A stretch of DNA of 64,000 nt, from positions 124,001 through 188,000 of IMG/VR virus record IMGVR_UViG_3300035665_000001; one strand, written 5' to 3'. Shown here piece after piece: positions 17,740 to 59,381 of this stretch. The notes beneath the pieces were generated by a model. The model ran no database searches and was not told the origin of the DNA. It saw only the letters and a program-made list of their open reading frames with translations. Made by a program: the position numbers and the translations under genes. The first letter of the stretch is position 1. Each line of letters opens with the position of its first letter.

Positions 17740-18555
17740 ATGGTTGATTCAATTTTTAAAAAAATGGGTAGTGTAGTTGCAACCGCTGTTGCAAATGAAG
17801 CATCTGCCAGACAGGCGGCAGTTACTACTTTAACCACTGCATTAGAAACTGCTAATACTAATAGACAAAATGCTATTTCAACTGAAGCATCTGCAAGACA
17901 AGCCGCAGATACTACTTTAACAAATAATCTTGCTTCTGAAGCAACTTCAAGAGCAACTGCTGATAACAATTTGACTACAGCTATCAATACCGAAAAAGCT
18001 AGAATTGATGCTATTTTATCAGCATCATCTGCTGATAAAGATTCATTTGCTGAAATTGTTACTTTGATTAACTCAGTTGATACTACTAATGATAACGCAT
18101 TCGCATCATATGTAACATCTAATAATGCAGCAGTCGCGGCATTAGATACTGCGTATAAAGCTGCTGATACTACATTAACTAATAATTTGGCATTAAAAGC
18201 ACCAATTGCAAACCCAACATTTACTGGTGTTGCAACTTTCGTAGGTATTAAAGAAACTAAAATTGCTATGTCAGCAAACAACATTGATTTAGCTACAGGG
18301 TCTGTATTCAGTAAAACTATTTCAGGTGCTACTACATTAACTATTTCAAATTCACCTACATCTGGTTTAGTAGGAACTTTTATTCTTAACCTTACTAATG
18401 GTGGTTCATCAACTATTACTTGGTTTAGTGGTATTAAATGGGTTGGTGGTACAGCTCCAACTTTAACAACTGCTGGTAGAGATAGATTGGGTTTCATTAC
18501 TGAAGATGGTGGTACAACTTGGGATGGTTTTGTAATGGGTAAAGATCTTAAATAA
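17740..18555 (+). CDS. Tail/whisker fibre shaft or adaptor protein (MVDSIFKK family)
   Basis: EASARQAAD coiled-coil repeats; KAPIANPTFTG; C-terminal ITW...KW.GG.APTLT..G.D...F.T.DGGTTW domain. Confidence 0.75.
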   Translation: MVDSIFKKMGSVVATAVANEASARQAAVTTLTTALETANTNRQNAISTEASARQAADTTLTNNLASEATSRATADNNLTTAINTEKARIDAILSASSADKDSFAEIVTLINSVDTTNDNAFASYVTSNNAAVAALDTAYKAADTTLTNNLALKAPIANPTFTGVATFVGIKETKIAMSANNIDLATGSVFSKTISGATTLTISNSPTSGLVGTFILNLTNGGSSTITWFSGIKWVGGTAPTLTTAGRDRLGFITEDGGTTWDGFVMGKDLK

Positions 18556-18565
18556 GGAGATTTTT

Positions 18566-19807
18566 ATGATTAAAGACATTATATTGTGTGCAAATACCCC
18601 AAAGGTATCTAGTGGAACTACATATGCGAGTAGTTCAAATACTACCGCTAGTACAAACCGTGGAACTCCAGTATCACAAGCCTTTAATACATCGGGATCA
18701 TATTTTATATTTGGGACAACATCTGCTGGAAACTACTTACAGGTATCATTTGGATTTGCAGTATCCGTTACACAGGTAACATATCGAAATGCTGTTGGTA
18801 GTAGCTGGGCACCAACAAGTGTAAAAATTAGGTATAGTAATGATGGCAGTACATGGAATGATGCTGTCACTTACTCTGATAACGCCAGTACATCTTTACA
18901 AACTATATCTGTATCTGGTGGTTCTGGTTCTTATTGGCAGTTATACCAAAATAGTAGCACTCGTGCTGGTAGTGGTGGTTATGAGTGGCACATGGATAGT
19001 TTTTCTATGACTGGTTCGTATGGATTAGTTAATGGTCAGATTTCTTATACTGTTCCAGGTACTTATACATGGGTTTGTCCGCAAGGAATAACTAGTGTTT
19101 GTGCAGTTGCTATTGGTGGTGGTAGTGGAGGCTGTCATTATACTGGTGGTGCTGGTGGCGGTTTATCTTACCAAAATAATATTTCTGTAACGCCAGGTCA
19201 ATCTTATACTGTAGTTGTAGGTGCAGGTGCGGTTGGTACAGGTTGGACTTATGGAAAAGGTGGCGATAGTAGTGTTTTTGGTATGGTTGCTGGTGGCGGT
19301 GGTACAATCGGAGGTTTAGGTTATAATTCTACTCCACCTGGTGGTGTTGGTAATGCTGGAACTGGTGGGTTAGGAGAGGGTTATTTTAGAAATAATTCTG
19401 TCTACAATGTTGGTGGTAGTGGTGCTGGTGGTTACGGATACAATGGTGGCGTAGGTACATATATCACTAGTTCACATGGTAATGGAAATGGTGGTGGTGG
19501 TACTGGTATTTTTGGTGGTACTGTTGGTGGATCTGGTGGTACATATGGGTTTGGTAATGCTGGATATACTGGAAGCGGTGGTGCTGGTGGATCTGGTGGT
19601 ACATCCGGTGGATTAGTAACTGGGTGGACAACAGACAGTAGTGCAAGTAGTGGTTCTGGTACACCTGGCAGTGGCGGTTTATACGGTGGTGGTGGTGGTT
19701 CTGGATGTGGATATGGGTATGTTAGTTCCACTGGTGGAAATGGTGCTATACGTATCATCTGGGGTGCTGGTCGTGCGTTCCCAAATACATTAACTGGAGA
19801 CTTATAA
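18566..19807 (+). CDS. Glycine-rich fibre/receptor-binding protein with discoidin-like N-terminal domain
   Basis: MIKDIIL leader; YLQV.F..V..V...YSNDG.TW; PGTYTWVCP...AIGGG; GGNGAIRIIWG. Confidence 0.75.
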   Translation: MIKDIILCANTPKVSSGTTYASSSNTTASTNRGTPVSQAFNTSGSYFIFGTTSAGNYLQVSFGFAVSVTQVTYRNAVGSSWAPTSVKIRYSNDGSTWNDAVTYSDNASTSLQTISVSGGSGSYWQLYQNSSTRAGSGGYEWHMDSFSMTGSYGLVNGQISYTVPGTYTWVCPQGITSVCAVAIGGGSGGCHYTGGAGGGLSYQNNISVTPGQSYTVVVGAGAVGTGWTYGKGGDSSVFGMVAGGGGTIGGLGYNSTPPGGVGNAGTGGLGEGYFRNNSVYNVGGSGAGGYGYNGGVGTYITSSHGNGNGGGGTGIFGGTVGGSGGTYGFGNAGYTGSGGAGGSGGTSGGLVTGWTTDSSASSGSGTPGSGGLYGGGGGSGCGYGYVSSTGGNGAIRIIWGAGRAFPNTLTGDL

Positions 19808-20091
19808 TGGATATGTATATTGAAGTTAACGATGGTGTTATTCATGGACATCCAATACTTGCAGATAATTTGGGTTATTTAGGGTTAGATCTACACAACT
19901 TACCAAGTAATTATGTAAAATATATCAGAGATGATCATTCTATCTCACCTACAAATGTAAAATCCGGGCAGTGGTTGGAGTATATTAAAGAATATAATCC
20001 TGAATTGGGGGTTGTATTTGAGTATGCTTTAGTTTTGGGAAATCCTGATTCTGATGCAAATCATATACCACCTGCATTACAAACAAATTAA
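19807..20091 (+). CDS. Putative fibre chaperone (paralog of 47086)
   Basis: MYIE..DGVIH.HPIL.DNL; coupled to the Gly-rich gene. Confidence 0.6.
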   Translation: MDMYIEVNDGVIHGHPILADNLGYLGLDLHNLPSNYVKYIRDDHSISPTNVKSGQWLEYIKEYNPELGVVFEYALVLGNPDSDANHIPPALQTN

Positions 20092-20111
20092 TTTTAAAAG
20101 GGAAAACTATT

Positions 20112-20627
20112 ATGCAAATTGCAATTATCGACAACGGTCAAGTCATTAAATTAGGCTACTATAAATCATTATTTCCAAATGTATCTTTTCCAACAACTGG
20201 ACCTGATGCAGAATTTTTACAAGCTAATTCGGCTTTAGAAGTTACTGTTTGGAAACCAACAACAGCAACACAAAAATTAGTTGCATCCGAACCTTATGTT
20301 GAAGGAAATTTTGTTTATACTGTTAGAGTAGAAGACAAAACTGCAGAAGAACTTGCTGCAGAAACAGCTTCAGTAGAAGCAAAAAAAGATGCACAAACAG
20401 TATCAATGAAACAAGCAAGAATTGCTCTTTCAAGACAAGGATTGTTAGATGATGTTACTGCTGCATTATCATTAATTGAAGGTCAAGTTGGTGAAGAAGC
20501 AAGAATTGCTTGGGAATTTGCTACAGAAGTAAAACGTGGTGATAAAGTGTTAAAATCTGTGGCTTATGCTTTAAGCTGGGATGAAAGTAAATTAGATGAA
20601 TTGTTTGAATTAGCTACAACAATTTAA
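20112..20627 (+). CDS. Tail-fibre assembly-like protein
   Basis: VSMKQARIAL...LLD.V, IAWEFATEV.R, LDELF..A motifs. Confidence 0.65.
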   Translation: MQIAIIDNGQVIKLGYYKSLFPNVSFPTTGPDAEFLQANSALEVTVWKPTTATQKLVASEPYVEGNFVYTVRVEDKTAEELAAETASVEAKKDAQTVSMKQARIALSRQGLLDDVTAALSLIEGQVGEEARIAWEFATEVKRGDKVLKSVAYALSWDESKLDELFELATTI

Positions 20628-20825: not shown

Positions 20826-21737
20826 ATGATTAAACAACTTATAATGGGTGTTGGTGATAGCACTTCTGGTGGGGGTGCGACGTTATTTACTTTTTCATCA
20901 TTCACTTTTACAAACGCCTCATCAACTGGACGAAATGGCCCAACATTAGCTCAATGTACATCTGCCTATTCTACTCAACCATGGGTATCTAGCACTGCAA
21001 ATTTTAATATGGTAACACAAGGAATACAGTTATGGACTGTTCCCTCAACTGGAACATATCGTATACTCGCAACTGGTGCTGCTGGAGCACAAAGTAATCC
21101 AAAAGCATATACTGCAGGTGGTAATGGTGGTTCGGCACAAGGAGATTTTACTTTAACATCTGGAACTATACTAGCAATCCTTGTTGGACAAATGGGAACT
21201 ATACCACAAACATATTCTGGTGGTTGGGCTGCAGGTAGTGGTGGTGGTGGTTCATTTGTAGTATTGAATTCATCAAATACTCCATTAATTGTTGGAGCAG
21301 GTGGTGGCGGTGGTGGTGATGATGGTGCTACGTACCAAACATTTCAACAAGGTGGACAAGGATCGGTTGTTACGAATTATACTGGCTCAAATGGACTTGC
21401 AGGTAACAATGGTGGTGGTAATGGTGGGGCTGCAGGTGGTGGTTTCAATAATAATGGTGTTAGTGGTTATAACAAAGTTGGTGGTCTTTCTTATCTGAAT
21501 GGTGGCACTGGTGGTAATGGAAATGTTGATTATCCATCTGGACAGATTGGAGGATTTGGTGGTGGCGGTCAGGGTGGTGGTTGTCCTGGCGGTGGTGGTG
21601 GTGGTTTTATAGGTGGGGCATATGGTCCAGGAAACGTAAGTGGACGTGGTGCAACCCATTTTAATTCCGGTTCAAACCAAATAAATACAACTGGTGGTAA
21701 TAGTGGGCATGGTTTCGTCACTATTACAAAATTATAA
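20826..21737 (+). CDS. Glycine-rich (ALK/LTK-like Gly-rich domain) receptor-binding protein
   Basis: TFTNA..TGR.GP, GIQLWTVP.TG.Y.I.A.GA.G, L.ILVGQ.G, GGGGSFV, GGFGGGG. Confidence 0.75.
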   Translation: MIKQLIMGVGDSTSGGGATLFTFSSFTFTNASSTGRNGPTLAQCTSAYSTQPWVSSTANFNMVTQGIQLWTVPSTGTYRILATGAAGAQSNPKAYTAGGNGGSAQGDFTLTSGTILAILVGQMGTIPQTYSGGWAAGSGGGGSFVVLNSSNTPLIVGAGGGGGGDDGATYQTFQQGGQGSVVTNYTGSNGLAGNNGGGNGGAAGGGFNNNGVSGYNKVGGLSYLNGGTGGNGNVDYPSGQIGGFGGGGQGGGCPGGGGGGFIGGAYGPGNVSGRGATHFNSGSNQINTTGGNSGHGFVTITKL

Positions 21738-21762
21738 TAAAAGATTAAAAAGGGGAAAATCT

Positions 21763-22344
21763 ATGTATATTAATACATTAACAAAAGAAACATATAACAC
21801 ATTGGATGACATAAGAACAAGTTTTAGTAGTATATCCTTACCCACAAATTTAACAGATTCAGTATTGTTAACATTTAATATTGTAGAAGTATTAAATTTA
21901 CCAGAACCTCAAGTTACAGATTTACAAGTTGCAATCGAAACAAATGATGTAGAATTGGCAAATGATGGAAATTATGTACAAAAATGGGTTATTACTGATA
22001 AGTTTGCAACTTATACTAATTTTCAAGGGGTAATTGTTACTAAAGAAGAACAGGAACAAAATTTTTTATTAGATAAAAATAAACTACGAGTTCCTTATGC
22101 GATTACACCTATACAAGCAAGAATGGGCTTTTTAAATGTTGGTTTACTTGATAAGGTAGAGACTTTAATAAATGCAGATAAAGTTAAAACTATTTGGTGG
22201 GAATACTCATTAGAAATTCATCGCAACAACGAACATATTTTAAGTTTAACACAGGCATTAAATTTAACTGATACAGAAATGGATGATATTTTTATTTCTG
22301 GTAGAAATTTGGTTCCAGACGTTCTCGCAGATGTTGTTCAGTAA
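21763..22344 (+). CDS. Tail-fibre assembly-like protein
   Basis: VP..ITP.QAR, WWEYS.E..R, L.LTD.EMDDIF; start at MYINT. Confidence 0.65.
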   Translation: MYINTLTKETYNTLDDIRTSFSSISLPTNLTDSVLLTFNIVEVLNLPEPQVTDLQVAIETNDVELANDGNYVQKWVITDKFATYTNFQGVIVTKEEQEQNFLLDKNKLRVPYAITPIQARMGFLNVGLLDKVETLINADKVKTIWWEYSLEIHRNNEHILSLTQALNLTDTEMDDIFISGRNLVPDVLADVVQ

Positions 22345-22451: not shown

Positions 22452-25139
22452 ATGATTAAAGATATTATTTTGGGTGTTGAATCACCATATACAGTAAGTG
22501 GTAGTAGTGCTGGTGATAAAAATTGGGATAAAGTAAGTTTATTATTGAATGGGGATGATTTGTTTGATCATTCATCAAATACTAAAACTATAAGCAATAC
22601 ATTAACAACCGTTAACAATGCAACAAAAAAATTTGGTAGTGGCAGTTTATCATTTTCATCTTTAGCAACTATGGTTGTACATTCACCTTCTGATAATTTA
22701 ATAAATTGGTTTTCTGGTGGGACTTATACTTTTGAATGTTGGGTTTATCCTACATCAATAACAGATGCAAATTCTGGTGGATCGTTAGTTGGAAATGGGT
22801 GTTCGGATGGATCTAATGGATATAATTATTGGTCATTTGGACCTAAGTCTGATGGTAGACTCGGTTTGTATTATTATACAGGTGGGTTAAACAATGTTTA
22901 TTCAAACTCAACAATCCCGTTTAATGCTTGGACTCATATTGCTTTCACATGTGATGGAACTAATATAAAATTTTGGATAAATGGCAACTTAGATACCAAT
23001 ACCACCATAGTAGGTTCGCCACAAATTTCTAATGCTGCAAACACTGGTGATTTTTCTATGGGTAGATTAGCCGCAGGTGTATTTAGTGGTTACGTTGACG
23101 ATGTTCGAATTACAAAAGGTATTGATAGATATACAGCTAATTTTACGCCACCAACAGCAGCATTGCCAACTTCCATGTTTGTGGCTGATTCATCAGCAAC
23201 ACCTGTTTCTGATCCCAATACATCAAAATATGTTTCTTTGTTATTAAATGGCGATGGTACAAATGGTTCACAAAATAACACTTTCATTGATGGTAGTGTT
23301 AACAATGTAACCATTACTAAGTATGGTGATGCTACTCAAGGTTCTTTTAGTCCTTTCGGTAATTCGTGGAGTGTTTATTTTGATGGCAATGGGGATTATT
23401 TAAGTTTGCAAAATAGTGTTACCAATCAACCAGGCAATGGAGATTTTACTATAGAATGTTGGGTTAACGTAGATTACATTTCTTCGTATCAAATTATATT
23501 TTGTAAAGGTGAAGGGATAACTTCGGGTGAAATGTTTTTTGCTGTTACTGCATCTGGTTATATTGTATTGTATAACCCCTCAGTAACAAGTTCAAATACA
23601 ATTACTCCAGGTTTATGGAATCATGTAGCATTAGTTAGACAATCCGGAGTAATAAAAATATTCGTAAATGGTGTTGGTGGGACAGGTGTAAATGATTCGA
23701 CAAATTTCAATTCTACAAGCTATTTTAATTTAGGAGATAGAAATGCAGGTGCTAGTTATTTAAACTATCCGTTAAAGGGTGCAATATCAAATTTTAGAAT
23801 GGTGAAAGGTAGTGCACTTTATACTGCTAACTTTACACCATCTACAGCACCATTAGTTGCAGTAACGGGAACAACATTATTGATGTGTCAATCAAACGGG
23901 TTTATTGATAACAGCTCTAATAATTCTTTGATTACTGTTTATGGTGAAACTAAAATTATTAAAAGTAGTCCATTTCCCGAAATATATGATAAGAATGTTC
24001 ATGGAGGCAGTGTTTATTTTGATGGAACTGGTGATTATTTGAGTATGCCTAGTTCTGCTAATTATGCGTTTGATACCAGTGATTTTACAGTGGAAGCCTG
24101 GGTTAACCCAGCTACTGTTGGGTTATTGTGTGTTTTTCAATGTAGAGATACTGCATCTAATGGTATGTGGTTGGGATTATATAATGGTAACGTATTTTGG
24201 TATGATTCGGCAATTGGTACATGGAGTGGTACTGCGGTAAAATTAAATAGCTGGACACATTTAGCTTGGTCGAGAAATTCTAGTACATGCAGAATGTTTG
24301 TAAATGGTGATGATGTTGGAGTTACAAAAACATCAAATGCAAATTATACAAGCACTAATGCGAAAATAAGTTATGATGCTAGTAATAATGGTAATTATTT
24401 TAATGGTTATATTTCAAATTTGCGAGCAGTAAAAGGAACCGCACTTTACACTGTAAATTTTACACCAGGTACAAGTCCATTAAGTCAGGTATCCAATACG
24501 ATTTTACTGTTAAAATTTGATAATGCCGGGATTTATGATGCAATAGGTAAAAACGATTTAATAACTTATGGCAACTCTCAAATTAGTACAACCCAAAAGA
24601 AATATGGTACAGGTGCTATGTATTTTGATGGTAGTAGTTATGTAAAAATTCCAACTAGTGTTGGTGGAGATTTAGATTTTCAATCTATTGATTTTACTAT
24701 AGAATTTTGGGCAAATAGTCCAATGAGTGCAAATCAAGGATGGGTTGATAAGTGGGGAAGTAGTAGTAGCAGATCTGTGTTCATAGGATACTCAAATTCA
24801 TCACCTAGTTCAGGTGTGAATTTTAACTGGACTACTAATGGTACTAATTGGAGTGCAATTAATTCTTTATCTATCCCATCTGCAAATGTATGGCATCATT
24901 ACGCTGCAATTAGAAATGGTAATACATTAAACTTTTTTATTGATGGTGTTTCTCAAGGTACTGCATCGATAAGTGGTTCTATATATTCTAGTTCATCACC
25001 GTTTATTATTGGTTGTAATGGTGAAACACTAGGTTCTAGTTGGTATTATACGGGGTATATTGATGATTTGCGTATAATCAAAGGGAAAGCACTTTATACT
25101 GCAAATTTTACCCCTCCATCTGCACCATTATCATTATAA
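22452..25139 (+). CDS. Four-domain LamG/concanavalin-A-like receptor-binding protein 1
   Basis: Four repeats of FT.E.W...W.H.A..R...G.I...R..KG..YT.NFTP; MIKDIILG leader. Confidence 0.85.
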   Translation: MIKDIILGVESPYTVSGSSAGDKNWDKVSLLLNGDDLFDHSSNTKTISNTLTTVNNATKKFGSGSLSFSSLATMVVHSPSDNLINWFSGGTYTFECWVYPTSITDANSGGSLVGNGCSDGSNGYNYWSFGPKSDGRLGLYYYTGGLNNVYSNSTIPFNAWTHIAFTCDGTNIKFWINGNLDTNTTIVGSPQISNAANTGDFSMGRLAAGVFSGYVDDVRITKGIDRYTANFTPPTAALPTSMFVADSSATPVSDPNTSKYVSLLLNGDGTNGSQNNTFIDGSVNNVTITKYGDATQGSFSPFGNSWSVYFDGNGDYLSLQNSVTNQPGNGDFTIECWVNVDYISSYQIIFCKGEGITSGEMFFAVTASGYIVLYNPSVTSSNTITPGLWNHVALVRQSGVIKIFVNGVGGTGVNDSTNFNSTSYFNLGDRNAGASYLNYPLKGAISNFRMVKGSALYTANFTPSTAPLVAVTGTTLLMCQSNGFIDNSSNNSLITVYGETKIIKSSPFPEIYDKNVHGGSVYFDGTGDYLSMPSSANYAFDTSDFTVEAWVNPATVGLLCVFQCRDTASNGMWLGLYNGNVFWYDSAIGTWSGTAVKLNSWTHLAWSRNSSTCRMFVNGDDVGVTKTSNANYTSTNAKISYDASNNGNYFNGYISNLRAVKGTALYTVNFTPGTSPLSQVSNTILLLKFDNAGIYDAIGKNDLITYGNSQISTTQKKYGTGAMYFDGSSYVKIPTSVGGDLDFQSIDFTIEFWANSPMSANQGWVDKWGSSSSRSVFIGYSNSSPSSGVNFNWTTNGTNWSAINSLSIPSANVWHHYAAIRNGNTLNFFIDGVSQGTASISGSIYSSSSPFIIGCNGETLGSSWYYTGYIDDLRIIKGKALYTANFTPPSAPLSL

Positions 25140-46318: not shown

Positions 46319-47086
46319 ATGATTAAAGATATTATAGTTGGTTCAAGTAGTTATACAGGTGTTCCTGCAACTGGTGCACAAATTACGTTCACAACACCTG
46401 GAACTTATACGTGGATATGTCCATCCAATGTAACTACGGTTTGTGCAGTTGCCATTGGTGGTGGTGGTAGTAGTGGAGCATACTATACTGGTGGTGCTGG
46501 TGGTGGATTATCTTATTTAAACAATATCGCTGTAACGCCAGGTCAATCTTATACCGTAGGTGCAGGTGGTATCGGTTCAGGTGGTATCGGTTGTATTGCA
46601 GGTGGTATCGGTTCAGGTGGTATCGGTTGTATTGCAGGTGGTATCGGTTCAGGTGGTATCGGTTGTATTGCAGGTGGGAATAGTTCAGTATTTGGTATGG
46701 TAGCTGGTGGAGGTGGTGGAAATAGTGCCCCTGGTTATAATAATGCACCACCACAAGGTGGTTATGATAATGCGGGAACTAGCGGGAGATCACCATACAA
46801 CTACTCTACTAACAGTTCAATTTACAACGTAGGTGGTGCTGGTGCTGGTGGTACTGGCATTTTTGGTGGAACAGGTGGTGGAACAGGTGGTGGAACAGGT
46901 GGTTTGCCTGGCGGTATAGATAACTCCAATAATACAACTACTATCAGTGGTTCGGTTGGTATTGGTGGTGGTGGCGGATCAGGGTGTGGATATGACTATA
47001 TAGATTCAAAAGGTGGGAATGGAGCAGTTAGAATAATTTGGGGTTCTGGTAGAGCTTTTCCTAATACAAATACGGAGGATTTATAA
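46319..47086 (+). CDS. Glycine-rich fibre protein (rearranged paralog of 18566)
   Basis: MIKDIIVG leader; PGTYTWICP...; GGNGAVRIIWGSGRAFPNT. Confidence 0.7.
   Translation: MIKDIIVGSSSYTGVPATGAQITFTTPGTYTWICPSNVTTVCAVAIGGGGSSGAYYTGGAGGGLSYLNNIAVTPGQSYTVGAGGIGSGGIGCIAGGIGSGGIGCIAGGIGSGGIGCIAGGNSSVFGMVAGGGGGNSAPGYNNAPPQGGYDNAGTSGRSPYNYSTNSSIYNVGGAGAGGTGIFGGTGGGTGGGTGGLPGGIDNSNNTTTISGSVGIGGGGGSGCGYDYIDSKGGNGAVRIIWGSGRAFPNTNTEDL
46562..46677 (+). repeat. Perfect 36-bp tandem repeat, three copies plus a partial
   Basis: GCAGGTGGTATCGGTTCAGGTGGTATCGGTTGTATT at 46562, 46598, 46634. Confidence 0.95.
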
Positions 47087-47379
47087 TGAAAATGTATATT
47101 GAACTTAAAGATGGAGTTATTCACAATCATCCTATTTTGGAAGATAATTTAATTCATTTAGGCTTTGATATTAATAACTTACCAAATAATTATGTTGAGT
47201 TTGTTAGAGATGATTATTCCATTTCATCCACAAAATTAAAAGCTGGACAATGGTTGGAATATTATGCAGAATATAATGAAGCAAATAAAATAGTGTATGA
47301 ATATTCTATAGTTATGGGTGAGGCTATTCCTGCAGATCCAAATATGTTTCCTCCAGGGTTACTGATTGGTCGTGAATAG
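47086..47379 (+). CDS. Putative fibre chaperone (paralog of 19807)
   Basis: MYIE..DGVIH.HPIL.DNL; RDD.SIS. Confidence 0.6.
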   Translation: MKMYIELKDGVIHNHPILEDNLIHLGFDINNLPNNYVEFVRDDYSISSTKLKAGQWLEYYAEYNEANKIVYEYSIVMGEAIPADPNMFPPGLLIGRE

Positions 47380-50242: not shown

Positions 50243-52855
50243 ATGATTAAAGATATTATATTAGGTTCATCCGAAATAGTAACAGTAAGTGGTACAGGTG
50301 ATCCAAATTGGAGTAACGTTGCGTTGTTATTAAATGGTGATGATTTATTGGATCATTCGAGTAATTCTAAAACCATAACTGTTAATGGTACTATATCAAT
50401 TAATACAACTACAAAGAAATACGGAACAGGTTCATATTATAGTTCATCTGCTGGAAATTATTTAACAGTTACAAATATGGGTTTATTTGGATCTTCTAAT
50501 TTTACAATGGAAGGATGGTTTTATAAGATAGCTAGCACTGGAAATGGGTTGACAAGTTATTTTTCATATAACCAATATACGGATGGTATTTTATTCCGCG
50601 ACGATTGTTTATATATTAATGGTTTGAATTTAGGTTCATTTTCATCAGGTTTATCAACAAACACTTGGCACCATATAGCATTAGTCCGTGATGGAAACAC
50701 TTTTACAATTTATTTAGATGGTGTGTCGACTAAACAATATAGTAGTAATGCTGTTATTTCACCATCATCCACAACAACATTATGGGTGGGTGCGGCATCA
50801 CATAATGCAGGTAGTGAAGGGTTTTATGGGTATATTGATGATGTAAGAGTAACTAAAGGGGTTGCGGTTTATACTGCAAATTTTACACCAACACAATTAC
50901 AGATTGGAGCTTTCACAACTTCACCTGTTTCTGCTTCCGATCCAAATACATCGAGATATGTTTCTTTATTATTAAATGGTGATGGTACAAACGGTGCACA
51001 AAATAATACTTTTGTTGATAGTAGTTCAAGTAATTTGACTGTTACTAGGTATGGTGATTCAACACAGGGCTCATTTGGACCTTTTGGTAATAGTTGGGGT
51101 GTTTCTTTTAATGGTGCATCCGATTATTTAGAGGTACCAACAGCTTTTGCAGGTTTAACAAATACAACATCACCATTTACAGTCGAAGGTTGGTTTAATA
51201 GTAATATATCTATTTCTGGTATTTGTCCAATCGGTATGAATAGTAAGAGTTCAGGGACAAATGTTTTATTATGGGGTGGTGATTTATGGGTAAATAATAC
51301 GAATGTATTTTCATTTAGTACAAACCATACCGATGTAGTAAAATATAATTGGTATCATGTTGCTATTTGTTACAATGGATCAACAGTAAAATGGTATGAA
51401 AATGGTAATTTAATTTATACTTATAATGGGGCATTAACAGTTGCACCTAATGATTGTACATTAGGAATTGGTGCTGAATTTGACGCTGCAAATGGTGGCA
51501 GTCCAGGCAATTATCATAATGGTTACATAAGTAATTTTAGAGTTAGTAATATCGTTCGTTATACATCGAACTTTACACCACCAACATCTAATTTTGTTTC
51601 AGATACAAATACTTTACTATTAACCTGTAGTGGTAATATGTTTAAAGATTATTCATCACTTAATAAAACAATATCAATTTTTAATACACCAAAAATTGTA
51701 AAGGAATGTCCATTTCCAGAAGTGTATGATAAAACTGTTCAAGGTGGAAGTGCTTATTTTGATGGTACAGGTGATTATTTGACTACTAATGGAGTATCTA
51801 TTTCATCAGCAACAAATTATACCTTAGAATTCTGGTTTTATACCACCGATGTAACTGCAAGTTATCACAGAATTATTCATAATAACTCCAATGGTAATAT
51901 TTATTATTGGTACACCAATGGGACAACATTATATGGTTATAATGCTGACATTGGTACCCTTATTTCTGCAGGGACATTTGTTCCAGGTCAATGGACTCAT
52001 GTTGCGATTAGTAGAGTGAGTACAACGACCACGGTGTATTTAAATGGGGTTTCTACAAAAACGTATTCTGGTTCAAGTGCATTCACTACGATTGGTAATA
52101 CAATTGGTGGCGGTCCAGCTTCAGAATATTTTACTGGATACTTATCTAATATTCACATTGTAAATGGTACAGCATTATATACCTCCAATTTTACACCATC
52201 AACATCTCCATTAACAGCAATTGCAAACACCTCATTACTATTGAAGTGTGATAATGCTGGTATTATCGATGCAATAGGTAAAAATGATTTGGTTACTTAT
52301 GGTAATGCTCAAATTAGTACAGCTAAGAAAAAATATGGTACAGGCAGTATGTATTTCGATGGTTCAAATGGTTATTTGGTAATACCCCACAATACCAATT
52401 TAAATATGGTAGGAGGTAATTTTACTATTGAGTTTTGGGCTAATTTTGCGGCAAATCAAAACGGTCCTGTTATTTCGAAATGGATAAATGGTAAAGGTGA
52501 ATTTTATTTTGGTATTCATAATTCAGCAGTACAATGTGCAATTTTAAATAGTTCCAGTGCTGGGAATACCTCTGGTGGTACATTTTGTTCAGCAGGTGCA
52601 TTTACAACGAATGTTTGGAATCATTGGGCTGCGGTTAGAAATGGTGATAATATTTTAATGTTTAAAGATGGTGTTTTACAATCAACTACATCATTTACTG
52701 GTAATATTTTTACATCTGATTCAAAATTAACATGTGGGTATAATTTAGACAATGGTTGGACAATAAACGGTTACATAGATGATTTAAGAATCACAAAAGG
52801 GAAAGCGTTGTACACATCAAACTTTACACCTCCATCTACACCACTAACACCATAA
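50243..52855 (+). CDS. Four-domain LamG-like receptor-binding protein 3
   Basis: Same framework; MIKDIILG leader; late motif at 50202. Confidence 0.85.
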   Translation: MIKDIILGSSEIVTVSGTGDPNWSNVALLLNGDDLLDHSSNSKTITVNGTISINTTTKKYGTGSYYSSSAGNYLTVTNMGLFGSSNFTMEGWFYKIASTGNGLTSYFSYNQYTDGILFRDDCLYINGLNLGSFSSGLSTNTWHHIALVRDGNTFTIYLDGVSTKQYSSNAVISPSSTTTLWVGAASHNAGSEGFYGYIDDVRVTKGVAVYTANFTPTQLQIGAFTTSPVSASDPNTSRYVSLLLNGDGTNGAQNNTFVDSSSSNLTVTRYGDSTQGSFGPFGNSWGVSFNGASDYLEVPTAFAGLTNTTSPFTVEGWFNSNISISGICPIGMNSKSSGTNVLLWGGDLWVNNTNVFSFSTNHTDVVKYNWYHVAICYNGSTVKWYENGNLIYTYNGALTVAPNDCTLGIGAEFDAANGGSPGNYHNGYISNFRVSNIVRYTSNFTPPTSNFVSDTNTLLLTCSGNMFKDYSSLNKTISIFNTPKIVKECPFPEVYDKTVQGGSAYFDGTGDYLTTNGVSISSATNYTLEFWFYTTDVTASYHRIIHNNSNGNIYYWYTNGTTLYGYNADIGTLISAGTFVPGQWTHVAISRVSTTTTVYLNGVSTKTYSGSSAFTTIGNTIGGGPASEYFTGYLSNIHIVNGTALYTSNFTPSTSPLTAIANTSLLLKCDNAGIIDAIGKNDLVTYGNAQISTAKKKYGTGSMYFDGSNGYLVIPHNTNLNMVGGNFTIEFWANFAANQNGPVISKWINGKGEFYFGIHNSAVQCAILNSSSAGNTSGGTFCSAGAFTTNVWNHWAAVRNGDNILMFKDGVLQSTTSFTGNIFTSDSKLTCGYNLDNGWTINGYIDDLRITKGKALYTSNFTPPSTPLTP

Positions 52856-52914: not shown

Positions 52915-53790
52915 TCATTGTATAGTTAATACTGTATAGTAATTTTTTGGTTCATGAAAAAATGTAGTGTAATCAGAAACAACATTTACCAAAGAAAGTG
53001 TATTGTTTGTGGATTCAATTTTCTCAATTTTTTCTAAATCAAACATAATGTATGGAATAAAATATCCACCCCCATCTGCCATAATTTTAATAGTATTACC
53101 TACGTTATTATAGGCTAACAAAATTTTATCACCAATTGCCTCATGTATTCGGATTTTAATATTCTGATTGATGTAAAAAGAACCATCATCTTTACAATTT
53201 AAAAATTTTTTCTCTACATCCAAGATTTTAAAGTTACTAAATGTTTTTGATGATATTACTATCACATTTGCAGTACCTCTTCGATTTTTTCTACCAATGT
53301 TATTTGCTTCATTTTGAATGATACCAAAAATTTTAATATCAACATCATCCACAAAAGTAAATTTTTCTGCACGATCAACAATTTCACATAACATCTTATT
53401 TTCGATTGATTCATATAAAACTGAAAAGGTGTCATGTAAATTATGTTGTGGTGTTTTATCTTGTTGCAATGTATCTAAAAAGTCTAAAGTAATTTGACAT
53501 ACAGATTCATTATCTGTTTCTACCACAATATCATCGGTTTGTAATGAAAAAGAAGTGTTGGAATCATTAGAAACATACATAAATTTTATGGTATCCTGTT
53601 TTTTTGATACAGGTTGTATCTGCATAATATCATTAATGATTGATTTTTTTAAAAAATTAACTACAGCATTCAAAAATATATTCTTAGTATCTTCAGTCTG
53701 AGATATTAACAGTTGGTTTGATAGTAGTTGTATTGCAACATTATGTTTACCGCAACCTGGTGTAAAATCAATTTTTTCTACAATTTGCAT
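52915..53790 (-). CDS. Shortened T4 gp23/gp24-like capsid protein paralog
   Basis: IMQIQPV, I.NEAN.I.R.NRRG.AN.I..S, L.Y.....DGGGYF.PY, NYY motifs; only 291 aa. Confidence 0.65.
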   Translation of the reverse strand: MQIVEKIDFTPGCGKHNVAIQLLSNQLLISQTEDTKNIFLNAVVNFLKKSIINDIMQIQPVSKKQDTIKFMYVSNDSNTSFSLQTDDIVVETDNESVCQITLDFLDTLQQDKTPQHNLHDTFSVLYESIENKMLCEIVDRAEKFTFVDDVDIKIFGIIQNEANNIGRKNRRGTANVIVISSKTFSNFKILDVEKKFLNCKDDGSFYINQNIKIRIHEAIGDKILLAYNNVGNTIKIMADGGGYFIPYIMFDLEKIEKIESTNNTLSLVNVVSDYTTFFHEPKNYYTVLTIQ

Positions 53791-54982: not shown

Positions 54983-55009
54983 TTTAAATATCTCCTTTTT
55001 TTAGTTTAA

Positions 55010-56341
55010 TTATCTATTGCCATAATCTCTGGCACATGCAGTCCAGATATTTGCAAAGTTAGCAGTAGTATAACCTAAATTCCATTTTGATGAATTTAAC
55101 GTTGCTAACATTCTTAAATCACAAATAGTAGATGAACCATCAATTAATGTGGAAAGATTGTAAATTTTATTAATATCAACAAATGTTTCACCACCATTAC
55201 TACTAGTCCATTTATACATTGAAGCAGATAGTAAAATAATAACTGTAGTATTGGCAGGAATAGTAACAGTCATAGATGAATTGTTAGGTGTATTTCCACC
55301 TGTATATTGATATACATACGAATGACTTGTATTTGTAACAGAATTATAAGTTGTGGCATTTGGCGTAATAACTACTGCACCAGATCCTTCATGACCATAC
55401 ACCCACCCTGCAGCAAAATCCCAATACAACGTTTTATTTAATGATGACCCTGTTGTGTTTCTAACTGGTATTGCTAGGAATGAGTTTGGACAGTAACCAC
55501 CGTTATTGTAGGAGCCGTTGTATGCCGCTTGATAACTTCTATCTGTACCAACGATGTTATCGTGTCTAGCCCATAGAATTTGTGGACCTGGTTGTGCATC
55601 CGAACCAGAAAAACCATCATGTGTTGAATGTGAGGTTCCCAAACCATAACCAGATAATAAACACATTGCCTGAATTAATGAGGTATCACCATTTCCAGAT
55701 AGATAAGAATAATATGTTGTCCATGGTCCACTACTTGAACTTACTGGATAACCAGAAGCTCTATCCCATACGTTGTATAACGCACCTACAGAATAACCTT
55801 CTTTACCTTGATAACTGGATGCACTTGTTGATGCACTGCTAGCATTAACAACAGTAGTAGAAATAGATGCATTTCCAGTTCCATCAAATGAAACTGAACC
55901 AGTAACGTCCCCAGTTAATGCGATTGTTCTTGCAGTTGCTAATTTAGTGGCAGCAGCAGCAGTTGCAGTTAGACCTAATTTACCATCAATGTTTGTTTGT
56001 AATGTTGTAACTGCTGAAGCTCTTGTAGATACTTCACTTGCCAAATTGTTGGTTAAAGTGGTAATTGCTGAAGCTCTTGTAGATGCTTCAGTTGCCAAAT
56101 TATTGGTTAAAGTAGTATCTGCGTTTTGTCTTGCGGTTACTTCCGCAGTCAAATTATTGGTTAAAGTGGTATCTGCTGCTTGTCTTGCAGTTGCCTCAGT
56201 AGTAATCGCTGTTGAACGAGCAGTTTCAGCTGCGGTAATAGCAGTTTGCAATGCAGTGTCTGCTGCTTGTCTTGCAGTTGCCTCATTTGCGATATTAGTA
56301 GCAACAACACTACCGATTTTTTTAAATATTGAATCGACCAT
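55010..56341 (-). CDS. Tail/whisker fibre (MVDSIFKK family) with a unique tip domain
   Basis: EATARQAAD repeats; ATKLATARTI.LTGDVTGSVSFDG motif. Confidence 0.8.
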   Translation of the reverse strand: MVDSIFKKIGSVVATNIANEATARQAADTALQTAITAAETARSTAITTEATARQAADTTLTNNLTAEVTARQNADTTLTNNLATEASTRASAITTLTNNLASEVSTRASAVTTLQTNIDGKLGLTATAAAATKLATARTIALTGDVTGSVSFDGTGNASISTTVVNASSASTSASSYQGKEGYSVGALYNVWDRASGYPVSSSSGPWTTYYSYLSGNGDTSLIQAMCLLSGYGLGTSHSTHDGFSGSDAQPGPQILWARHDNIVGTDRSYQAAYNGSYNNGGYCPNSFLAIPVRNTTGSSLNKTLYWDFAAGWVYGHEGSGAVVITPNATTYNSVTNTSHSYVYQYTGGNTPNNSSMTVTIPANTTVIILLSASMYKWTSSNGGETFVDINKIYNLSTLIDGSSTICDLRMLATLNSSKWNLGYTTANFANIWTACARDYGNR

Positions 56342-56847: not shown

Positions 56848-57210
56848 TTATTTACTTGGTTCTACAGGCCATGCAATTTGCTCAGGTGTTGTAACATAGG
56901 GTTGAACACTTGGAAAATTACGTAATGCATTACGATAAGCTGCCCATTCTGCTTTTTTTGCATCTGATAATGCCGCGTCTGGAAGTTGTGTCCAATCAGA
57001 CATTTTCAATAAATCTGTACGAACAGTTCTAATATAATTAAAGAACTGTTCGTTGGTTGGAGGAACGATTGTTTCCGCCTCAAAATATTCAACATACCCT
57101 AATTCAGCTAAACCGACTTGGTCTTTTAAACCTGTTCTAGCTAATACATCCAAATATGGTATTTTACTTTCTGTAACAATACCACCAACTTCTAAATTAT
57201 AATAAACCAT
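56848..57210 (-). CDS. Tail-fibre assembly chaperone
   Basis: R..R..LL..SDWTQLPD...WA.YR.ALR..P...I.WP..P; start at MVYYN. Confidence 0.85.
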   Translation of the reverse strand: MVYYNLEVGGIVTESKIPYLDVLARTGLKDQVGLAELGYVEYFEAETIVPPTNEQFFNYIRTVRTDLLKMSDWTQLPDAALSDAKKAEWAAYRNALRNFPSVQPYVTTPEQIAWPVEPSK

Positions 57211-59381
57211 TACATATCTCCTGTACCTGTTGATGGGAATGAACGACCAGATCCCCAAATTATACGAACGCAACCACGACCACCTTTATTTAATCCGTAA
57301 CCCATTGGACTACTACTACCAGTTCCGCCACCGCCACCGCCATATAAACCACCTACTTTTGTACCAAAAACACCTATACTCCACCATGGGTTTTCACCAA
57401 TGTCACCATCTGTACCACCGGAACCACACATACCACCCGAATGTGCCCGTGAACTTCCTGATGTACCTTGACCAAATGGACCAACACCACCACCTGCACC
57501 TGTACCATAAGTAGAAGAGTACATATAACCACCTGCTGCACCGCCACCAGATCCATTGTGATTGGCACCATTTTCTCCAGATCCACCGTTTCCTGTATAA
57601 CCGCCGGCACCACCACCAGAACAAGCCCATTGTCCTGAACCATAACCACCATTACCACCACCACCTCTATATGCTCCACCACCACCAGCATTACTACCAT
57701 TGGAACCGCCATTAGCATAGAGTGTAGATGTATTTATGAAGTATGATTGACCACCGGATAAATCACCACCATTCCCATCACCACCTTTACCAACTTGAAC
57801 CGTATAATCTGTACCTGGTGTTACTGGAATGTTATTACCCCACGATAAAGCTCCACCAGCTCCACCACCATAAGACCATTGTGAACCACCACCAGCTCCA
57901 CCACCGATACAAACTACAGAAACAGATGTTACCCCAGGAGGACATCTCCATGTATAAGTACCATGTCCAGAACCATAGAAAGCTTGTCCAACTAATGAAC
58001 CACTACCACCAACAACAGTTCCAGAAACAGTAGTAGAAATAGATGCATTTCCTGTTCCATCGAATGAAACCGAACCAGTGACGTCACCAGTTAAAGAGAT
58101 AGTTCTTGCAGTTGCTAATTTAGTTGCTGCTGCTGCAGTTGCAGTTAGACCTAATTTACCATCAATGTTTGTTTGTAATGTTGTAACTGCTGAAGCTCTT
58201 GTAGATACTTCACTTGCCAAATTGTTGGTTAAAGTGGTAATTGCTGCTTGTCTTGCAGATGTTTCAACAGCTATAGCAGCTGCTTGTGCAGTTGAAACAG
58301 GTTTTGATAAGTCGGCTGTATTATCAACGTTAGTTAAACCAATTGCTGATTTATCTAATACACCATTTACAAAATTAGTACCATTCCATTTAATAATGTC
58401 GTTCACTTGTTTATTTGAAATTAATACATCATTTAATGAACCTAAAGCATGGTTATGATTGGTTTTACTATAGGTAAGATTTGTAAACTCTCTAGTTGCG
58501 ATAGTTTCAAATGTTCCACCAATTTGACCAACTTTGAAGAAATCATCTAATTCATCAAATAATAGAGCAAAATCAGACATATCACCACGATCAACTTGGA
58601 TACCAGCTTTACCTAAAGTAACACCTGAACCAATTTCTCCGGAATTAACTACAATAATGTTATCTTTAACATTTACAATTGTTGAGTTTACAGATGTTTG
58701 TGTACCGTTAACTGTTAAGTTACCACCAATAGTTAAATTACCACTCAATTGTTGACTAGTTCCAGAAATAGTGCTACTAAACACAGTTGGTGCAGATACT
58801 TGTACCTCATTAGTTGCACCAATACGAACATTAGAACCGGTACCAACTGCATTTAAAAATACGTCAGCGTTAATTCCTGATGTAGATATATTTACTGATT
58901 TTTCAGATTCAACTGTAGTTGTGCCAGTCCCAGAAGTTTTCATATCAATTGACTGATTACTATCTGAATGAATGTTAATTGTAGTTGCAGTTGTACCCAA
59001 AATAGCTGTATCACCAATATACAATGTATTTGTCGATAATTTGGCTTCATCAACGAAGATTGTTTTAAATCTTTGTGTTACTGAACCAATATCAATGTTA
59101 GCACCGCTTGGTAAAATTGTACTTGCTACAGTAAGTGATTTTGCATTGAAATCTTGTAACACGCTACCTGCTAAATTGGCTTTTAATGCATCTGCAGCTT
59201 TATAGGCTGTATCCAGTGCATTAACTGTATTCGATAATGTAGTAATAGCAGTTGTTCTAGATGTATTTGCAGAGGCAATATCAGCAGATAAACTATTATC
59301 AGCTGCCTGTCTTGCAGATGCTTCATTTGCAACAGCGGTTGCAACTACACTACCAATTTTTTTAAAAATTGAATCAACCAT
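57210..59381 (-). CDS. Tail/whisker fibre (MVDSIFKK family) with a glycine-rich tip
   Basis: GNLTVNGT, DNII..N, GLTNVDNTADL.KPVSTAQ, ARTISLTGD, Gly-rich GCVRIIWG tip. Confidence 0.82.
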   Translation of the reverse strand: MVDSIFKKIGSVVATAVANEASARQAADNSLSADIASANTSRTTAITTLSNTVNALDTAYKAADALKANLAGSVLQDFNAKSLTVASTILPSGANIDIGSVTQRFKTIFVDEAKLSTNTLYIGDTAILGTTATTINIHSDSNQSIDMKTSGTGTTTVESEKSVNISTSGINADVFLNAVGTGSNVRIGATNEVQVSAPTVFSSTISGTSQQLSGNLTIGGNLTVNGTQTSVNSTIVNVKDNIIVVNSGEIGSGVTLGKAGIQVDRGDMSDFALLFDELDDFFKVGQIGGTFETIATREFTNLTYSKTNHNHALGSLNDVLISNKQVNDIIKWNGTNFVNGVLDKSAIGLTNVDNTADLSKPVSTAQAAAIAVETSARQAAITTLTNNLASEVSTRASAVTTLQTNIDGKLGLTATAAAATKLATARTISLTGDVTGSVSFDGTGNASISTTVSGTVVGGSGSLVGQAFYGSGHGTYTWRCPPGVTSVSVVCIGGGAGGGSQWSYGGGAGGALSWGNNIPVTPGTDYTVQVGKGGDGNGGDLSGGQSYFINTSTLYANGGSNGSNAGGGGAYRGGGGNGGYGSGQWACSGGGAGGYTGNGGSGENGANHNGSGGGAAGGYMYSSTYGTGAGGGVGPFGQGTSGSSRAHSGGMCGSGGTDGDIGENPWWSIGVFGTKVGGLYGGGGGGTGSSSPMGYGLNKGGRGCVRIIWGSGRSFPSTGTGDM

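What the first reader, a model, noticed from the sequence alone, without database searches (positions are those of the whole stretch)
17740..59381. Modular adhesin system with two shared N-terminal docking peptides
Seen: six different tip proteins start MIK(D/Q)(I/L)I(L/M/V)(G/C) followed by a Ser/Gly/Thr linker (18566, 20826, 22452, 46319, 47449, 50243). Three fibres start MVDSIFKK(M/I)GSVVAT (17740, 55010, 57210). The 17740 fibre ends in a small domain rather than a tip and lies directly upstream of a MIKDIIL gene. Inferred: MVDSIFKK anchors fibres to the virion, and the 17740 C-terminal domain is a socket for interchangeable MIKDIILG tips, giving heterogeneous virions.
Basis: partly seen in the sequence, partly recalled or inferred. 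Interest (0 to 1): 0.68.

Follow-up and report, generated by a model that had tools for sequence, protein, structure and literature searches.

The report
Phage fibre socket with swappable tips
A large freshwater phage encodes one short fibre ending in a small knob and six different sugar-binding "tip" proteins that all start with the same 8-residue peptide; the same knob-then-peptide gene pairing recurs in hundreds of unrelated phages, so it is probably a general plug-and-socket for exchanging host-recognition tips.

Summary
Six genes start MIK(D/Q)(I/L)I(L/M/V)(G/C) plus a Ser/Gly/Thr linker. Three fibre genes start MVDSIFKK(M/I)GSVVAT; two lie on the minus strand, with starts at 56341 and 59381. 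Chance expects under 0.001 of either.

The window comes from a 306-kb T4-like lake-water phage. The last ~100 residues of the 17740 fibre ("domain X") occur in at least 502 IMG/VR loci. In the 80 best loci the domain is always the C-terminal end of a fibre gene. In 75 of 80 the next gene follows directly, usually overlapping the stop. Most of these start with a leader like MSVRDIVMAAAG, the motif class of MIKDIILG. At least 24 unrelated cargo types follow the leader.

Searching by leader finds domain X directly upstream in 37 of 44 cases. Leader similarity tracks domain X identity even when cargo is unrelated. A co-fold gave only weak support (0.44 against 0.00 for controls).

The socket-and-tip reading is well supported by comparative genomics, but binding is not shown. 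The anchor role of MVDSIFKK and mosaic virions remain inference. This is a new variant of the known branching-domain plus docking-peptide systems. One socket serving six tips is unusual.

The parts
17740..18555 (+). Socket fibre, 271 aa. It has an MVDSIFKKMGSVVAT N-terminus, an Ala/Thr-rich coiled-coil-like shaft with ARQAAD-TTLTNNL repeats, and a C-terminal knob.
   Evidence: An ATAAATA late-promoter-like box lies 60 nt upstream.
18247..18552 (+). Domain X, the C-terminal ~100-residue all-beta knob and proposed socket. It is the only copy in the 306-kb record.
   Evidence: Model pLDDT 86.7. Fold matches: Pa223 gp52 knob Z 8.2, CBA120 TSP4 XD1 Z 6.5.
18566..19807 (+). Tip 1: MIKDIILC leader, linker, F5/8 type C (discoidin) domain, glycine-rich domain. 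It starts 10 nt after the socket gene and has no promoter box of its own.
19807..20091 (+). 94-aa ORF overlapping the tip 1 stop. It is a paralogue of 47086-47379 and a putative tip-specific assembly factor (inferred).
   Evidence: clear similarity by eye. No Pfam or PHROG hit.
20112..20627 (+). 171-aa ORF of phrog_6034/10241/14311, the same families as 21763-22344. Role unknown.
20826..21737 (+). Tip 2: MIKQLIMG leader, linker, then a TNF-like plus glycine-rich module homologous to the ALK/LTK ectodomain.
   Evidence: PF12810. (phmmer E 8e-16 to ALK chains). Promoter box 40 nt upstream.
21763..22344 (+). 193-aa ORF of phrog_10241/6034, in the same families as 20112-20627.
22452..25139 (+). 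Tip 3: MIKDIILG leader, linker, four Laminin_G_3 (ConA-like lectin) domains.
   Evidence: Promoter box 33 nt upstream.
46319..47086 (+). Tip 4: MIKDIIVG leader, linker, TNF-like plus glycine-rich domain (Gly_rich_2). It contains 36-nt and 12-nt tandem repeats.
   Evidence: best PDB match is the Pam3 fibre gp24 (E 1.6e-3, 32% identity over 74 columns).
47086..47379 (+). 97-aa ORF overlapping the tip 4 stop; paralogue of 19807-20091.
47449..50082 (+). Tip 5: MIKDIILG leader, linker, four Laminin_G_3 domains.
   Evidence: Its N-terminal 50 aa were used in the co-fold.
50243..52855 (+). Tip 6: MIKDIILG leader, linker, four Laminin_G_3 domains.
55010..56341 (-). Second MVDSIFKK fibre, 443 aa: coiled-coil shaft and a C-terminal domain with no known family.
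57210..59381 (-). Third MVDSIFKK fibre, 723 aa, with the glycine-rich tip domain fused directly to its C-terminus. This is the same domain family as tips 1 and 4.
   Evidence: phrog_4474, PF21722.
56848..57210 (-). Tail-fibre assembly chaperone, overlapping the stop of the 57210 fibre.
   Evidence: PF16778, E 1e-15..

Best explanation
The window is part of a 306-kb T4-like phage from lake water. Gene 17740-18555 encodes a short coiled-coil fibre, probably a trimer, that ends in a ~100-residue beta-sandwich knob (domain X).

The six MIK proteins are alternative receptor-binding tips. Each has an 8-residue hydrophobic leader, a flexible Ser/Gly/Thr linker of ~15 residues, and then a lectin-like or glycine-rich binding module. 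The leader most likely acts as a docking peptide that binds the knob. It may add a beta-strand to the knob, with up to three leaders per trimeric knob. On this reading the 17740 fibre is an adaptor that can carry any of the six tips.

One tip gene sits in the ancestral position, directly after the socket gene. The other five are extra cassettes, each with its own late-promoter-like ATAAATA box.

Shown here: the motifs, the gene linkage in many phages, the leader-socket co-variation, the cargo diversity and the domain folds. Inferred: direct binding, stoichiometry, and mixed tips on one virion.

The MVDSIFKK(M/I)GSVVAT N-terminus is shared by three fibres, plus a frameshifted fourth. It is probably the proximal peptide that fixes these fibres to one kind of site on the virion. 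That is inferred by analogy only.
For: 1. Domain X is found in at least 502 IMG/VR loci. In the best 80 it always ends a fibre ORF of 134-1,407 aa, with the stop 1-11 codons after the match.
2. 75 of 80 loci have an ORF of at least 100 aa starting within -12 to +60 nt of that stop. Among 70 distinct pairs, 49 overlap the stop by 1 or 4 nt.
3. These ORFs begin with leaders such as MSVRDIVMAAAG, MAAHDILMGAAG, MATKDIILAAAG and MIRSVIFGAIG. In cross-validation, 42 of 70 score above the 99th percentile of 744 control ORF N-termini (Mann-Whitney p 5e-34). The window's six leaders score at the 98.0-99.7th percentile with a matrix built from other phages only.
4. Cargo behind the leader falls into at least 24 unrelated clusters: DUF7483 (24 members), Laminin_G_3 (14), beta-propellers, Gly_rich_2 and others.
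5. Leader similarity follows domain X identity (Spearman 0.47; Mantel 0 of 999 permutations). The correlation also holds among the 2,043 pairs with unrelated cargo (0.45).
6. The reciprocal test: of 44 leader-pattern matches with upstream sequence, 37 have domain X directly upstream. One more has it with an endonuclease ORF inserted between. The other six have an X-like C-terminus nearby, judged by eye only.
7. The same pairing occurs in cultured phages of different types: Pseudomonas pPa_SNUABM_DT01, Roseobacter CRP-603 and Limnohabitans DC31. In DT01, LamG proteins carry a shared N-terminus of their own.
8. In the window, five unlinked genes keep the leader despite unrelated upstream DNA and synonymous codon differences. 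There is only one domain X gene in the record.
9. The co-fold used three copies of domain X plus the first 50 aa of tip 5. Score 0.44, best of 3 controls 0.00, verdict 'weak support'. The mark was reached by 58 of 80 solved complexes and 2 of 110 mismatched pairs. At 0.60 or under it was reached by only 7 of those 80 solved complexes and by both mismatches that passed. The runs agree in at least 55% of contacts, and the partner's pLDDT is at least 39.
10. The glycine-rich tip domain occurs both fused to an MVDSIFKK shaft (57210) and free behind a leader (18566, 46319). So the leader stands where a shaft otherwise would.
Against: No experiment or virion proteomics exists for this phage. The co-fold passed only weakly, with a poorly folded partner, and no interface was reported.

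The fold of domain X resembles terminal TNF-like knobs (Pa223 gp52), the XD1 spacer domain of CBA120 TSP4 and T4 gp9/gp10, and glycan-binding StcE. It does not resemble the XD2/XD3 jellyrolls that are the proven docking sites (PMC8825819). The knob could therefore be a receptor binder itself.

Leader-socket co-variation could partly reflect physical linkage, because the leader lies within 40 nt of domain X in most phages. The motif is short: genome-wide scoring ranks four of the six leaders only 7th-10th of 4,439 candidate starts.

Other phages show one tip per socket within 4 kb, so six tips on one socket has no close precedent. The record is about 85% complete, so further sockets cannot be excluded.
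Confidence: 0.65

Rival explanations
1. Domain X is itself the receptor-binding knob of a short fibre. The leader proteins are separate receptor-binding proteins that attach through their leader to another virion part, such as a baseplate or a third protein. The gene adjacency then only reflects co-regulated host-recognition genes.
For: The fold matches are to distal TNF-like knobs and to a glycan-binding fold (StcE). In known phages the XD1 fold is not a docking site (PMC8825819; bioRxiv 10.1101/2025.06.11.659172). The co-fold gave only weak support.
Against: The pairing holds across contigs of 4 to 352 kb and across cultured phages of different families (for example Kyanoviridae and Pakpunavirus), which would need a shared third partner. 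Leader similarity tracks domain X identity even with unrelated cargo. The reciprocal search gave 37 of 44, or 38 counting L141. The co-fold controls scored 0.00.
Confidence: 0.17
2. The downstream leader proteins are assembly chaperones or folding partners of the fibre tip, as T4 gp38 and Tfa proteins are. On this reading they bind the knob transiently and are absent from virions.
For: Genes directly downstream of fibre genes often encode such chaperones. Stop-start overlap suggests coupled synthesis.
Against: The proteins are 200 to over 1,300 aa and made of lectin, propeller or glycine-rich receptor-binding modules. Their LamG relatives in cyanophages are annotated as virion structural proteins. 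Typical small chaperones are encoded separately, for example PF16778 at 56848-57210 and the Tfa-like genes after the cargo gene in CRP-603 and DC31.
Confidence: 0.06
3. The shared N-termini are only remnants of duplication or gene conversion, or a favourable translation-initiation sequence. They have no docking role.
For: The 17740 and 57210 fibres are 97% identical in DNA over the first 75 nt and share the 16 nt upstream, which points to recent conversion. The three LamG tips are paralogues.
Against: MIK leaders sit on three unrelated cargo types, with unrelated upstream DNA and synonymous differences. The same peptide motif is kept in phages of quite different codon usage, always next to domain X. 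The 55010 fibre keeps the MVDSIFKK peptide despite many synonymous changes.
Confidence: 0.04

Closest known systems
Dual receptor-binding proteins of Klebsiella podophages KP32, K11 and KP34: the branching domain of RBP1 plus the conserved N-terminal docking peptide of RBP2 (PMC6872550, PMC13352976)
   Same: A first fibre or spike carries a docking domain. The adjacent downstream gene encodes a second receptor-binding protein that has no anchor domain, only a short conserved N-terminal peptide (the first 29 aa in KP32 gp38). The peptide can carry unrelated cargo.
   Different: There the docking domain is a T4 gp10-like jellyroll placed between the anchor and the enzymatic domain of a spike that has its own receptor-binding part. 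Here the socket is a C-terminal knob with a different fold, and the fibre has no other tip. The leader is shorter (8-12 aa) and unrelated in sequence. Six partners share one socket instead of one.
Branched tailspike complexes of Ackermannviridae (CBA120 TSP1-4) and phage G7C gp66/gp63.1 (PMC8825819, PMC11414711)
   Same: Several receptor-binding proteins hang on one anchoring protein through dedicated domains, which widens host recognition. Domain X shares the XD1 fold of TSP4 (Z 6.5, rmsd 3.3, 88 residues aligned).
   Different: In CBA120 the partners bind XD2/XD3 through folded domains, each at its own site, and XD1 is regarded as a spacer. Here the partners share one identical short leader, so they would compete for one kind of site.
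T2/S16-type gp38 adhesin capping the gp37 long-tail-fibre tip (PMC12032242; Dunne et al. 2018, from my own knowledge)
   Same: A separate polypeptide, encoded next to the fibre gene, sits on the distal fibre end and provides the receptor specificity. It uses a polyglycine-rich module, as three of the six tips here do.
   Different: No sequence relation to gp37 or gp38 was found. gp38 attaches through a folded N-terminal domain, not a short leader. It is one adhesin per fibre.
Myocyanophage Pam3 fibre gp24 with chaperone gp25 (PMC9608196)
   Same: Its TNF-like plus glycine-rich receptor-binding module is the best structural match of tip 4. A small chaperone gene lies downstream, as with 56848-57210 (PF16778).
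   Different: In Pam3 the module is fused to an alpha-helical shaft that docks to the baseplate, as in the 57210 fibre here. In tips 1, 2 and 4 the shaft is replaced by the leader.

Membership tests
Branching-domain / conserved-peptide dual RBP system (Klebsiella KP32 type) | RBP1 carries a T4 gp10-like (XD2/XD3 jellyroll) branching domain between the anchor and the receptor-binding part. | tested here: not met
   Domain X is C-terminal and has no Pfam hit. Its best fold matches are a TNF-like knob and XD1, not XD2/XD3 (PMC8825819).
Branching-domain / conserved-peptide dual RBP system (Klebsiella KP32 type) | RBP2 lacks an anchor domain and starts with a short conserved peptide followed by variable cargo. 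| tested here: met
   Six tips share an 8-aa leader plus linker in front of three unrelated cargo types. The same holds in 70 other phages with at least 24 cargo clusters.
Branching-domain / conserved-peptide dual RBP system (Klebsiella KP32 type) | The RBP2 gene lies directly downstream of the RBP1 gene. | tested here: met
   18566 starts 10 nt after 17740 ends. 75 of 80 related loci show the same; 49 of 70 overlap the stop.
Branching-domain / conserved-peptide dual RBP system (Klebsiella KP32 type) | The peptide and the docking domain bind each other, and the peptide is required for incorporation into the virion. | tested here: inconclusive
   Co-fold score 0.44 against a best control of 0.00, 'weak support'. 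No bench data.
T2/S16 gp38 adhesin on gp37 | Sequence homology to gp38 and gp37. | tested here: not met
   No gp38 or gp37 family among Pfam or PHROG hits of any tip or fibre. Only generic coiled-coil matches to 'long tail fiber distal subunit' appeared.
T2/S16 gp38 adhesin on gp37 | A polyglycine-rich receptor-binding module. | tested here: met
   Met for three of the six tips and for the 57210 fibre: PF21722 or PF12810, ALK GRD homology, Pam3 gp24 match. Not met for the LamG tips.
Pam3 gp24-type TNF-like + glycine-rich fibre | A TNF-like beta-sandwich followed by a glycine-rich lattice at the distal end. | tested here: met
   Foldseek 7yfw_a E 1.6e-3, probability 1.00, 32% identity over 74 columns. 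The model is confident only in the beta core (mean pLDDT 62.5).
Pam3 gp24-type TNF-like + glycine-rich fibre | An N-terminal alpha-helical shaft that docks to the baseplate. | tested here: not met
   Tips 1, 2 and 4 have only the leader and linker before the module. The 57210 fibre does have a shaft.
T4-like phage (context) | gp23-type major capsid protein. | tested here: met
   PF07068 match at G000:71866-72909, E 3e-81.

The most novel reading that the evidence does not exclude
A C-terminal beta-sandwich knob and a ~10-residue N-terminal leader may form a previously undescribed, widely shared plug-and-socket standard. Many unrelated environmental phage lineages would use it to hang interchangeable receptor-binding modules on a fibre. 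In this jumbo phage the standard has been expanded to six tips competing for one socket. A single burst could then produce virions with mixed or differing tip sets, a bet-hedging host-recognition device.
Probability: 0.4. Interest if true: 0.8.

Novelty: new variant of a known kind. Interest (0 to 1): 0.7.

Why it matters
If the knob and leader bind, three things follow.

1. Genome annotation. Hundreds of uncultured phages would gain a simple, sequence-readable rule: a fibre ending in domain X, and the next gene starting with the leader. That rule says which gene is the true receptor-binding tip and where the exchange boundary lies. This helps host prediction and explains how lectin, propeller and glycine-rich modules move between phages.

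2. Engineering. It would offer a very small natural connector for attaching new binding modules to fibres. It is comparable to the Klebsiella docking peptide but far more widespread.

3. Phage biology. The six-to-one arrangement in this jumbo phage would make the long-discussed idea of mosaic, bet-hedging virions directly testable.

Tried and rejected
- Megablast of 18 kb of the window against cultured phages found no match.
- An exact back-translated MIKDIILG pattern in IMG/VR found only a near-identical contig of the same phage plus chance hits. The MVDSIFKK pattern likewise found only that contig and one relative. The exact leaders are therefore lineage-specific, and the motif had to be reached through domain X.
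- An ungapped leader matrix missed the window's leaders, because they are one residue shorter than the common register. Allowing an offset fixed this, but genome-wide specificity stayed modest.
- A PDB sequence search with the domain X profile found nothing meaningful. Foldseek on PDB gave no match at E <= 0.001. Only the Foldseek-independent alignment gave a clear top group.
- A search for further genes with the same leader within 4 kb of the socket in 70 other phages found none.
- The relative G001 has MVDSIFKK fibres but neither domain X nor MIK leaders. It is only 48% complete, so this is uninformative.
- The 579-aa ORF at G000:100135(-), starting MMNDLLQAAS, scored high for the leader but has no Pfam family. 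It is left open.
- Literature searches for this pairing found only the Klebsiella and Ackermannviridae analogues. The library is open-access only, so absence there is not proof of novelty.
- Not used: the large representative-protein search (not needed) and any alternative genetic code.
Full report
**Context.** The window is G000:C1:124001-188000 of a 306,333-bp IMG/VR virus record, estimated 85% complete. GC content is about 30%, rising to 36-40% over the fibre and tip genes. The record encodes a T4-type gp23 capsid protein (PF07068, E 3e-81). The window also holds a SegE-like GIY-YIG endonuclease. Near-identical sequence occurs in contigs from many lake-water metagenomes. No cultured phage matches at the DNA level. 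It is an uncultured T4-like freshwater jumbo phage.

**Observation.** Translation and a whole-genome regex scan confirm six ORFs beginning MIK(D/Q)(I/L)I(L/M/V)(G/C). They start at 18566, 20826, 22452, 46319, 47449 and 50243. Three intact ORFs begin MVDSIFKK(M/I)GSVVAT: 17740 on the + strand, and 56341 and 59381 on the - strand. Expected chance counts are 0.0005 and 0.00004.

Each MIK leader is followed by about 15 residues rich in Ser, Gly and Thr. The first recognisable domain begins at residue ~24-27. In the AlphaFold model of the 46319 protein, residues 1-19 are unstructured.

The cargo behind the leaders differs:
- 18566: discoidin plus glycine-rich domain.
- 20826: an ALK/LTK-like TNF-like plus glycine-rich module (phmmer E 8e-16).
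- 46319: Gly_rich_2. Its best PDB match is the receptor-binding fibre gp24 of cyanophage Pam3.
- 22452, 47449 and 50243: four Laminin_G_3 lectin domains each.

The DNA upstream of the six genes is unrelated apart from a GGAG-type ribosome site. Five of the six also have an ATAAATA box 33-41 nt upstream. The leader codons differ synonymously. The conservation is therefore at the peptide level.

**The socket domain.** The last ~100 residues of the 17740 protein ("domain X") match the C-termini of annotated tail-fibre proteins in six cultured phages of different kinds (phrog_9017). In Pseudomonas jumbo phage pPa_SNUABM_DT01 a 196-aa fibre with this domain lies next to four genes, three of them LamG proteins. 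Their N-termini resemble one another (MRIHLMAAAIR twice, MRIGYLAAAARR, MVRMLLPAAIKQ). In Roseobacter phage CRP-603 and Limnohabitans phage DC31 the next gene starts MSNVKKLMMTAASAG and MDSISQKMLMGAAGAS.

A profile search of IMG/VR found at least 502 loci. In the best 80:
- Domain X always ends a fibre ORF of 134-1,407 aa.
- 75 have an ORF of at least 100 aa starting within -12 to +60 nt of the stop.
- Among 70 distinct pairs, 49 overlap the stop by 1 or 4 nt.

Most of these downstream genes start with M-x-x-(R/K/H/N)-(D/N/S)-(I/L)-(I/V/L)-(M/L)-(A/G)-(A/S)-(A/S)-G. The window's MIKDIILGSS fits this motif with one residue fewer. In cross-validation, 42 of 70 exceed the 99th percentile of 744 control ORF N-termini (p 5e-34). 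The six window leaders score at the 98.0-99.7th percentile with a matrix built only from other phages.

Behind the leader lie at least 24 unrelated cargo clusters: DUF7483, LamG, several beta-propellers, Gly_rich_2, PKD, SPRY and more. Leader similarity follows domain X identity (Spearman 0.47; Mantel 0 of 999). This also holds among pairs with unrelated cargo (0.45).

The reverse test agrees. Of 44 IMG/VR matches to a leader DNA pattern with enough upstream sequence, 37 have domain X directly upstream. One has it with an endonuclease gene inserted between. Six, all from a 229-aa glycine-rich family, have a C-terminus nearby that looks X-like by eye. The pairing is reciprocal and not specific to this phage lineage.

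**Structure.** Domain X folds confidently as an eight-stranded beta sandwich (pLDDT 86.7). Sequence search of the PDB finds nothing. A Foldseek-independent alignment gives a top group well separated from the rest:
- Pa223 capsid-spike gp52 C-terminal knob, Z 8.2. Its authors describe it as a trimeric TNF-fold knob (bioRxiv 10.1101/2025.06.11.659172).
- Solidus gp83 C-terminal domain, Z 7.4.
- A KP1 baseplate protein, Z 7.2.
- CBA120 TSP4 residues 79-180, Z 6.5. This is the XD1 domain shared with T4 gp9 and gp10 and with glycan-binding StcE (PMC8825819).
- The next row has Z 3.3.

The tool warns that Z below 8 can be a common arrangement. The fold therefore places domain X among distal or spacer domains of phage fibres. 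It does not by itself show a docking function. XD1 in particular is not the docking domain in CBA120.

**Co-fold.** The job used three copies of domain X (alignment of 72 rows) and the first 50 residues of tip 5 (alignment of 12 LamG-type leaders). It scored 0.44, with the best of 3 controls at 0.00. The verdict was weak support. The mark was reached by 58 of 80 solved complexes and 2 of 110 mismatched pairs. At 0.60 or under it was reached by only 7 of those 80 solved complexes and by both mismatches that passed. The runs agree in at least 55% of contacts, and the partner's pLDDT is at least 39. Given the strong prior from gene pairing I count this as mild support, not proof.

**Interpretation.** The simplest reading is a two-part fibre: an adaptor fibre ending in a knob, and a tip protein that plugs in through its N-terminal leader. 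This phage has one knob gene in the held record and six leader genes. One is in the canonical adjacent position without its own promoter box. Five are separate cassettes with late-promoter-like boxes. Two of the cassettes have a small conserved downstream ORF (19807 and 47086).

The same glycine-rich module is also found fused directly to an MVDSIFKK shaft (57210 fibre), followed by a PF16778 tail-assembly chaperone. So the leader replaces a shaft. Other phages show one tip per socket within 4 kb. The six-fold expansion is unusual and is what would allow mixed virions. That, the stoichiometry and the binding mode are all inferred.

**The MVDSIFKK fibres.** Three fibres share the first 15 residues. 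The 17740 and 57210 genes are 97% identical in DNA over the first 75 nt and the 16 nt upstream, which points to recent conversion. The 55010 gene keeps the peptide through many synonymous changes. A related contig has two more such fibres with other distal parts. A common proximal attachment peptide is the usual meaning of such a pattern in phage fibres, but nothing here tests it.

**Comparison and novelty.** The nearest known systems are:
- The Klebsiella KP32-type branching domain plus conserved docking peptide, now experimentally validated (PMC13352976).
- The Ackermannviridae and G7C branched spikes (PMC8825819).
- The T2/S16 gp38 adhesin on gp37.

This system works like the first of these but fails its defining structural feature. 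The socket is not a gp10-like jellyroll inside a spike; it is a terminal knob of another fold. The leader is unrelated in sequence and shorter. I found no description of the pairing in the searchable literature, and that library is incomplete. I rate it a new variant of a known kind, with an unusually broad distribution and an unusual six-to-one expansion here.

**Limits.** There are no bench data. The co-variation may partly reflect linkage. The motif is short. The record is incomplete.

Noticed in passing
G000:C1:~242900-243397 (- strand), outside the window (locus L162): A fourth MVDSIFKK fibre gene, a short one with a glycine-rich end, is frameshifted. Its poly-A run has 9 A where the 55010 paralogue has 7. 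Contigs from four separate lake-water runs reproduce the A9 form. It is therefore a real pseudogene or a slippage-dependent gene, not a one-off assembly error.
   Followed up: partly
window 46864-46903 and 46561-46677: The tip 4 gene holds a perfect 12-nt repeat (3.3 copies) and a perfect 36-nt repeat (3.2 copies) inside its glycine-rich loops. The near-identical contig IMGVR_UViG_3300035188_001312 has three more 12-nt units, giving 267 aa instead of 255. The tip varies by repeat copy number within the population.
   Followed up: partly
window 20826-21737: A phage protein with clear sequence homology (phmmer E 8e-16) to the TNF-like plus glycine-rich ectodomain of animal ALK/LTK receptor kinases. 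Here it is used as a fibre tip behind the leader.
   Followed up: partly
window 44116-45351; also L141:5679-6131 and L027:4303-4797: A SegE-like GIY-YIG endonuclease with about eight tandem ~33-residue repeats (motif V-x-V-I-D-T-R-D) lies between the two tip clusters. In two other phages a small endonuclease-like ORF is inserted exactly between the socket gene and the leader gene. Homing endonucleases may help move these cassettes.
   Followed up: no
window 52915-53790 (- strand): A 291-aa protein with a weak partial gp23 match (PF07068, 33 bits). It lies next to the tip cluster, about 100 kb from the true capsid gene at G000:71866-72909. Its role is unknown.
   Followed up: no
G000:C1:98399-100135 (- strand), outside the window (locus L161): A 579-aa ORF starting MMNDLLQAASQD scores among the best leader-like N-termini in the genome but has no Pfam family. 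It may be a seventh, diverged tip.
   Followed up: partly
window, 33-60 nt upstream of 17740, 20826, 22452, 46319, 47449 and 50243: An ATAAATA box, like the T4 late promoter, precedes six of the seven + strand fibre and tip genes. Background density is 0.42 per kb over both strands. The 18566 gene lacks one and is probably co-transcribed with the socket gene.
   Followed up: partly
L124:2933-3880 and L142:2764-3729: In a family of small phages, the 229-aa glycine-rich leader protein (MVFHNIMMAAAG) is not preceded by domain X. A ~315-aa protein encoded about 1-1.5 kb downstream ends in a sequence that looks like a diverged domain X. This was judged by eye; the profile was not run on it.
   Followed up: no
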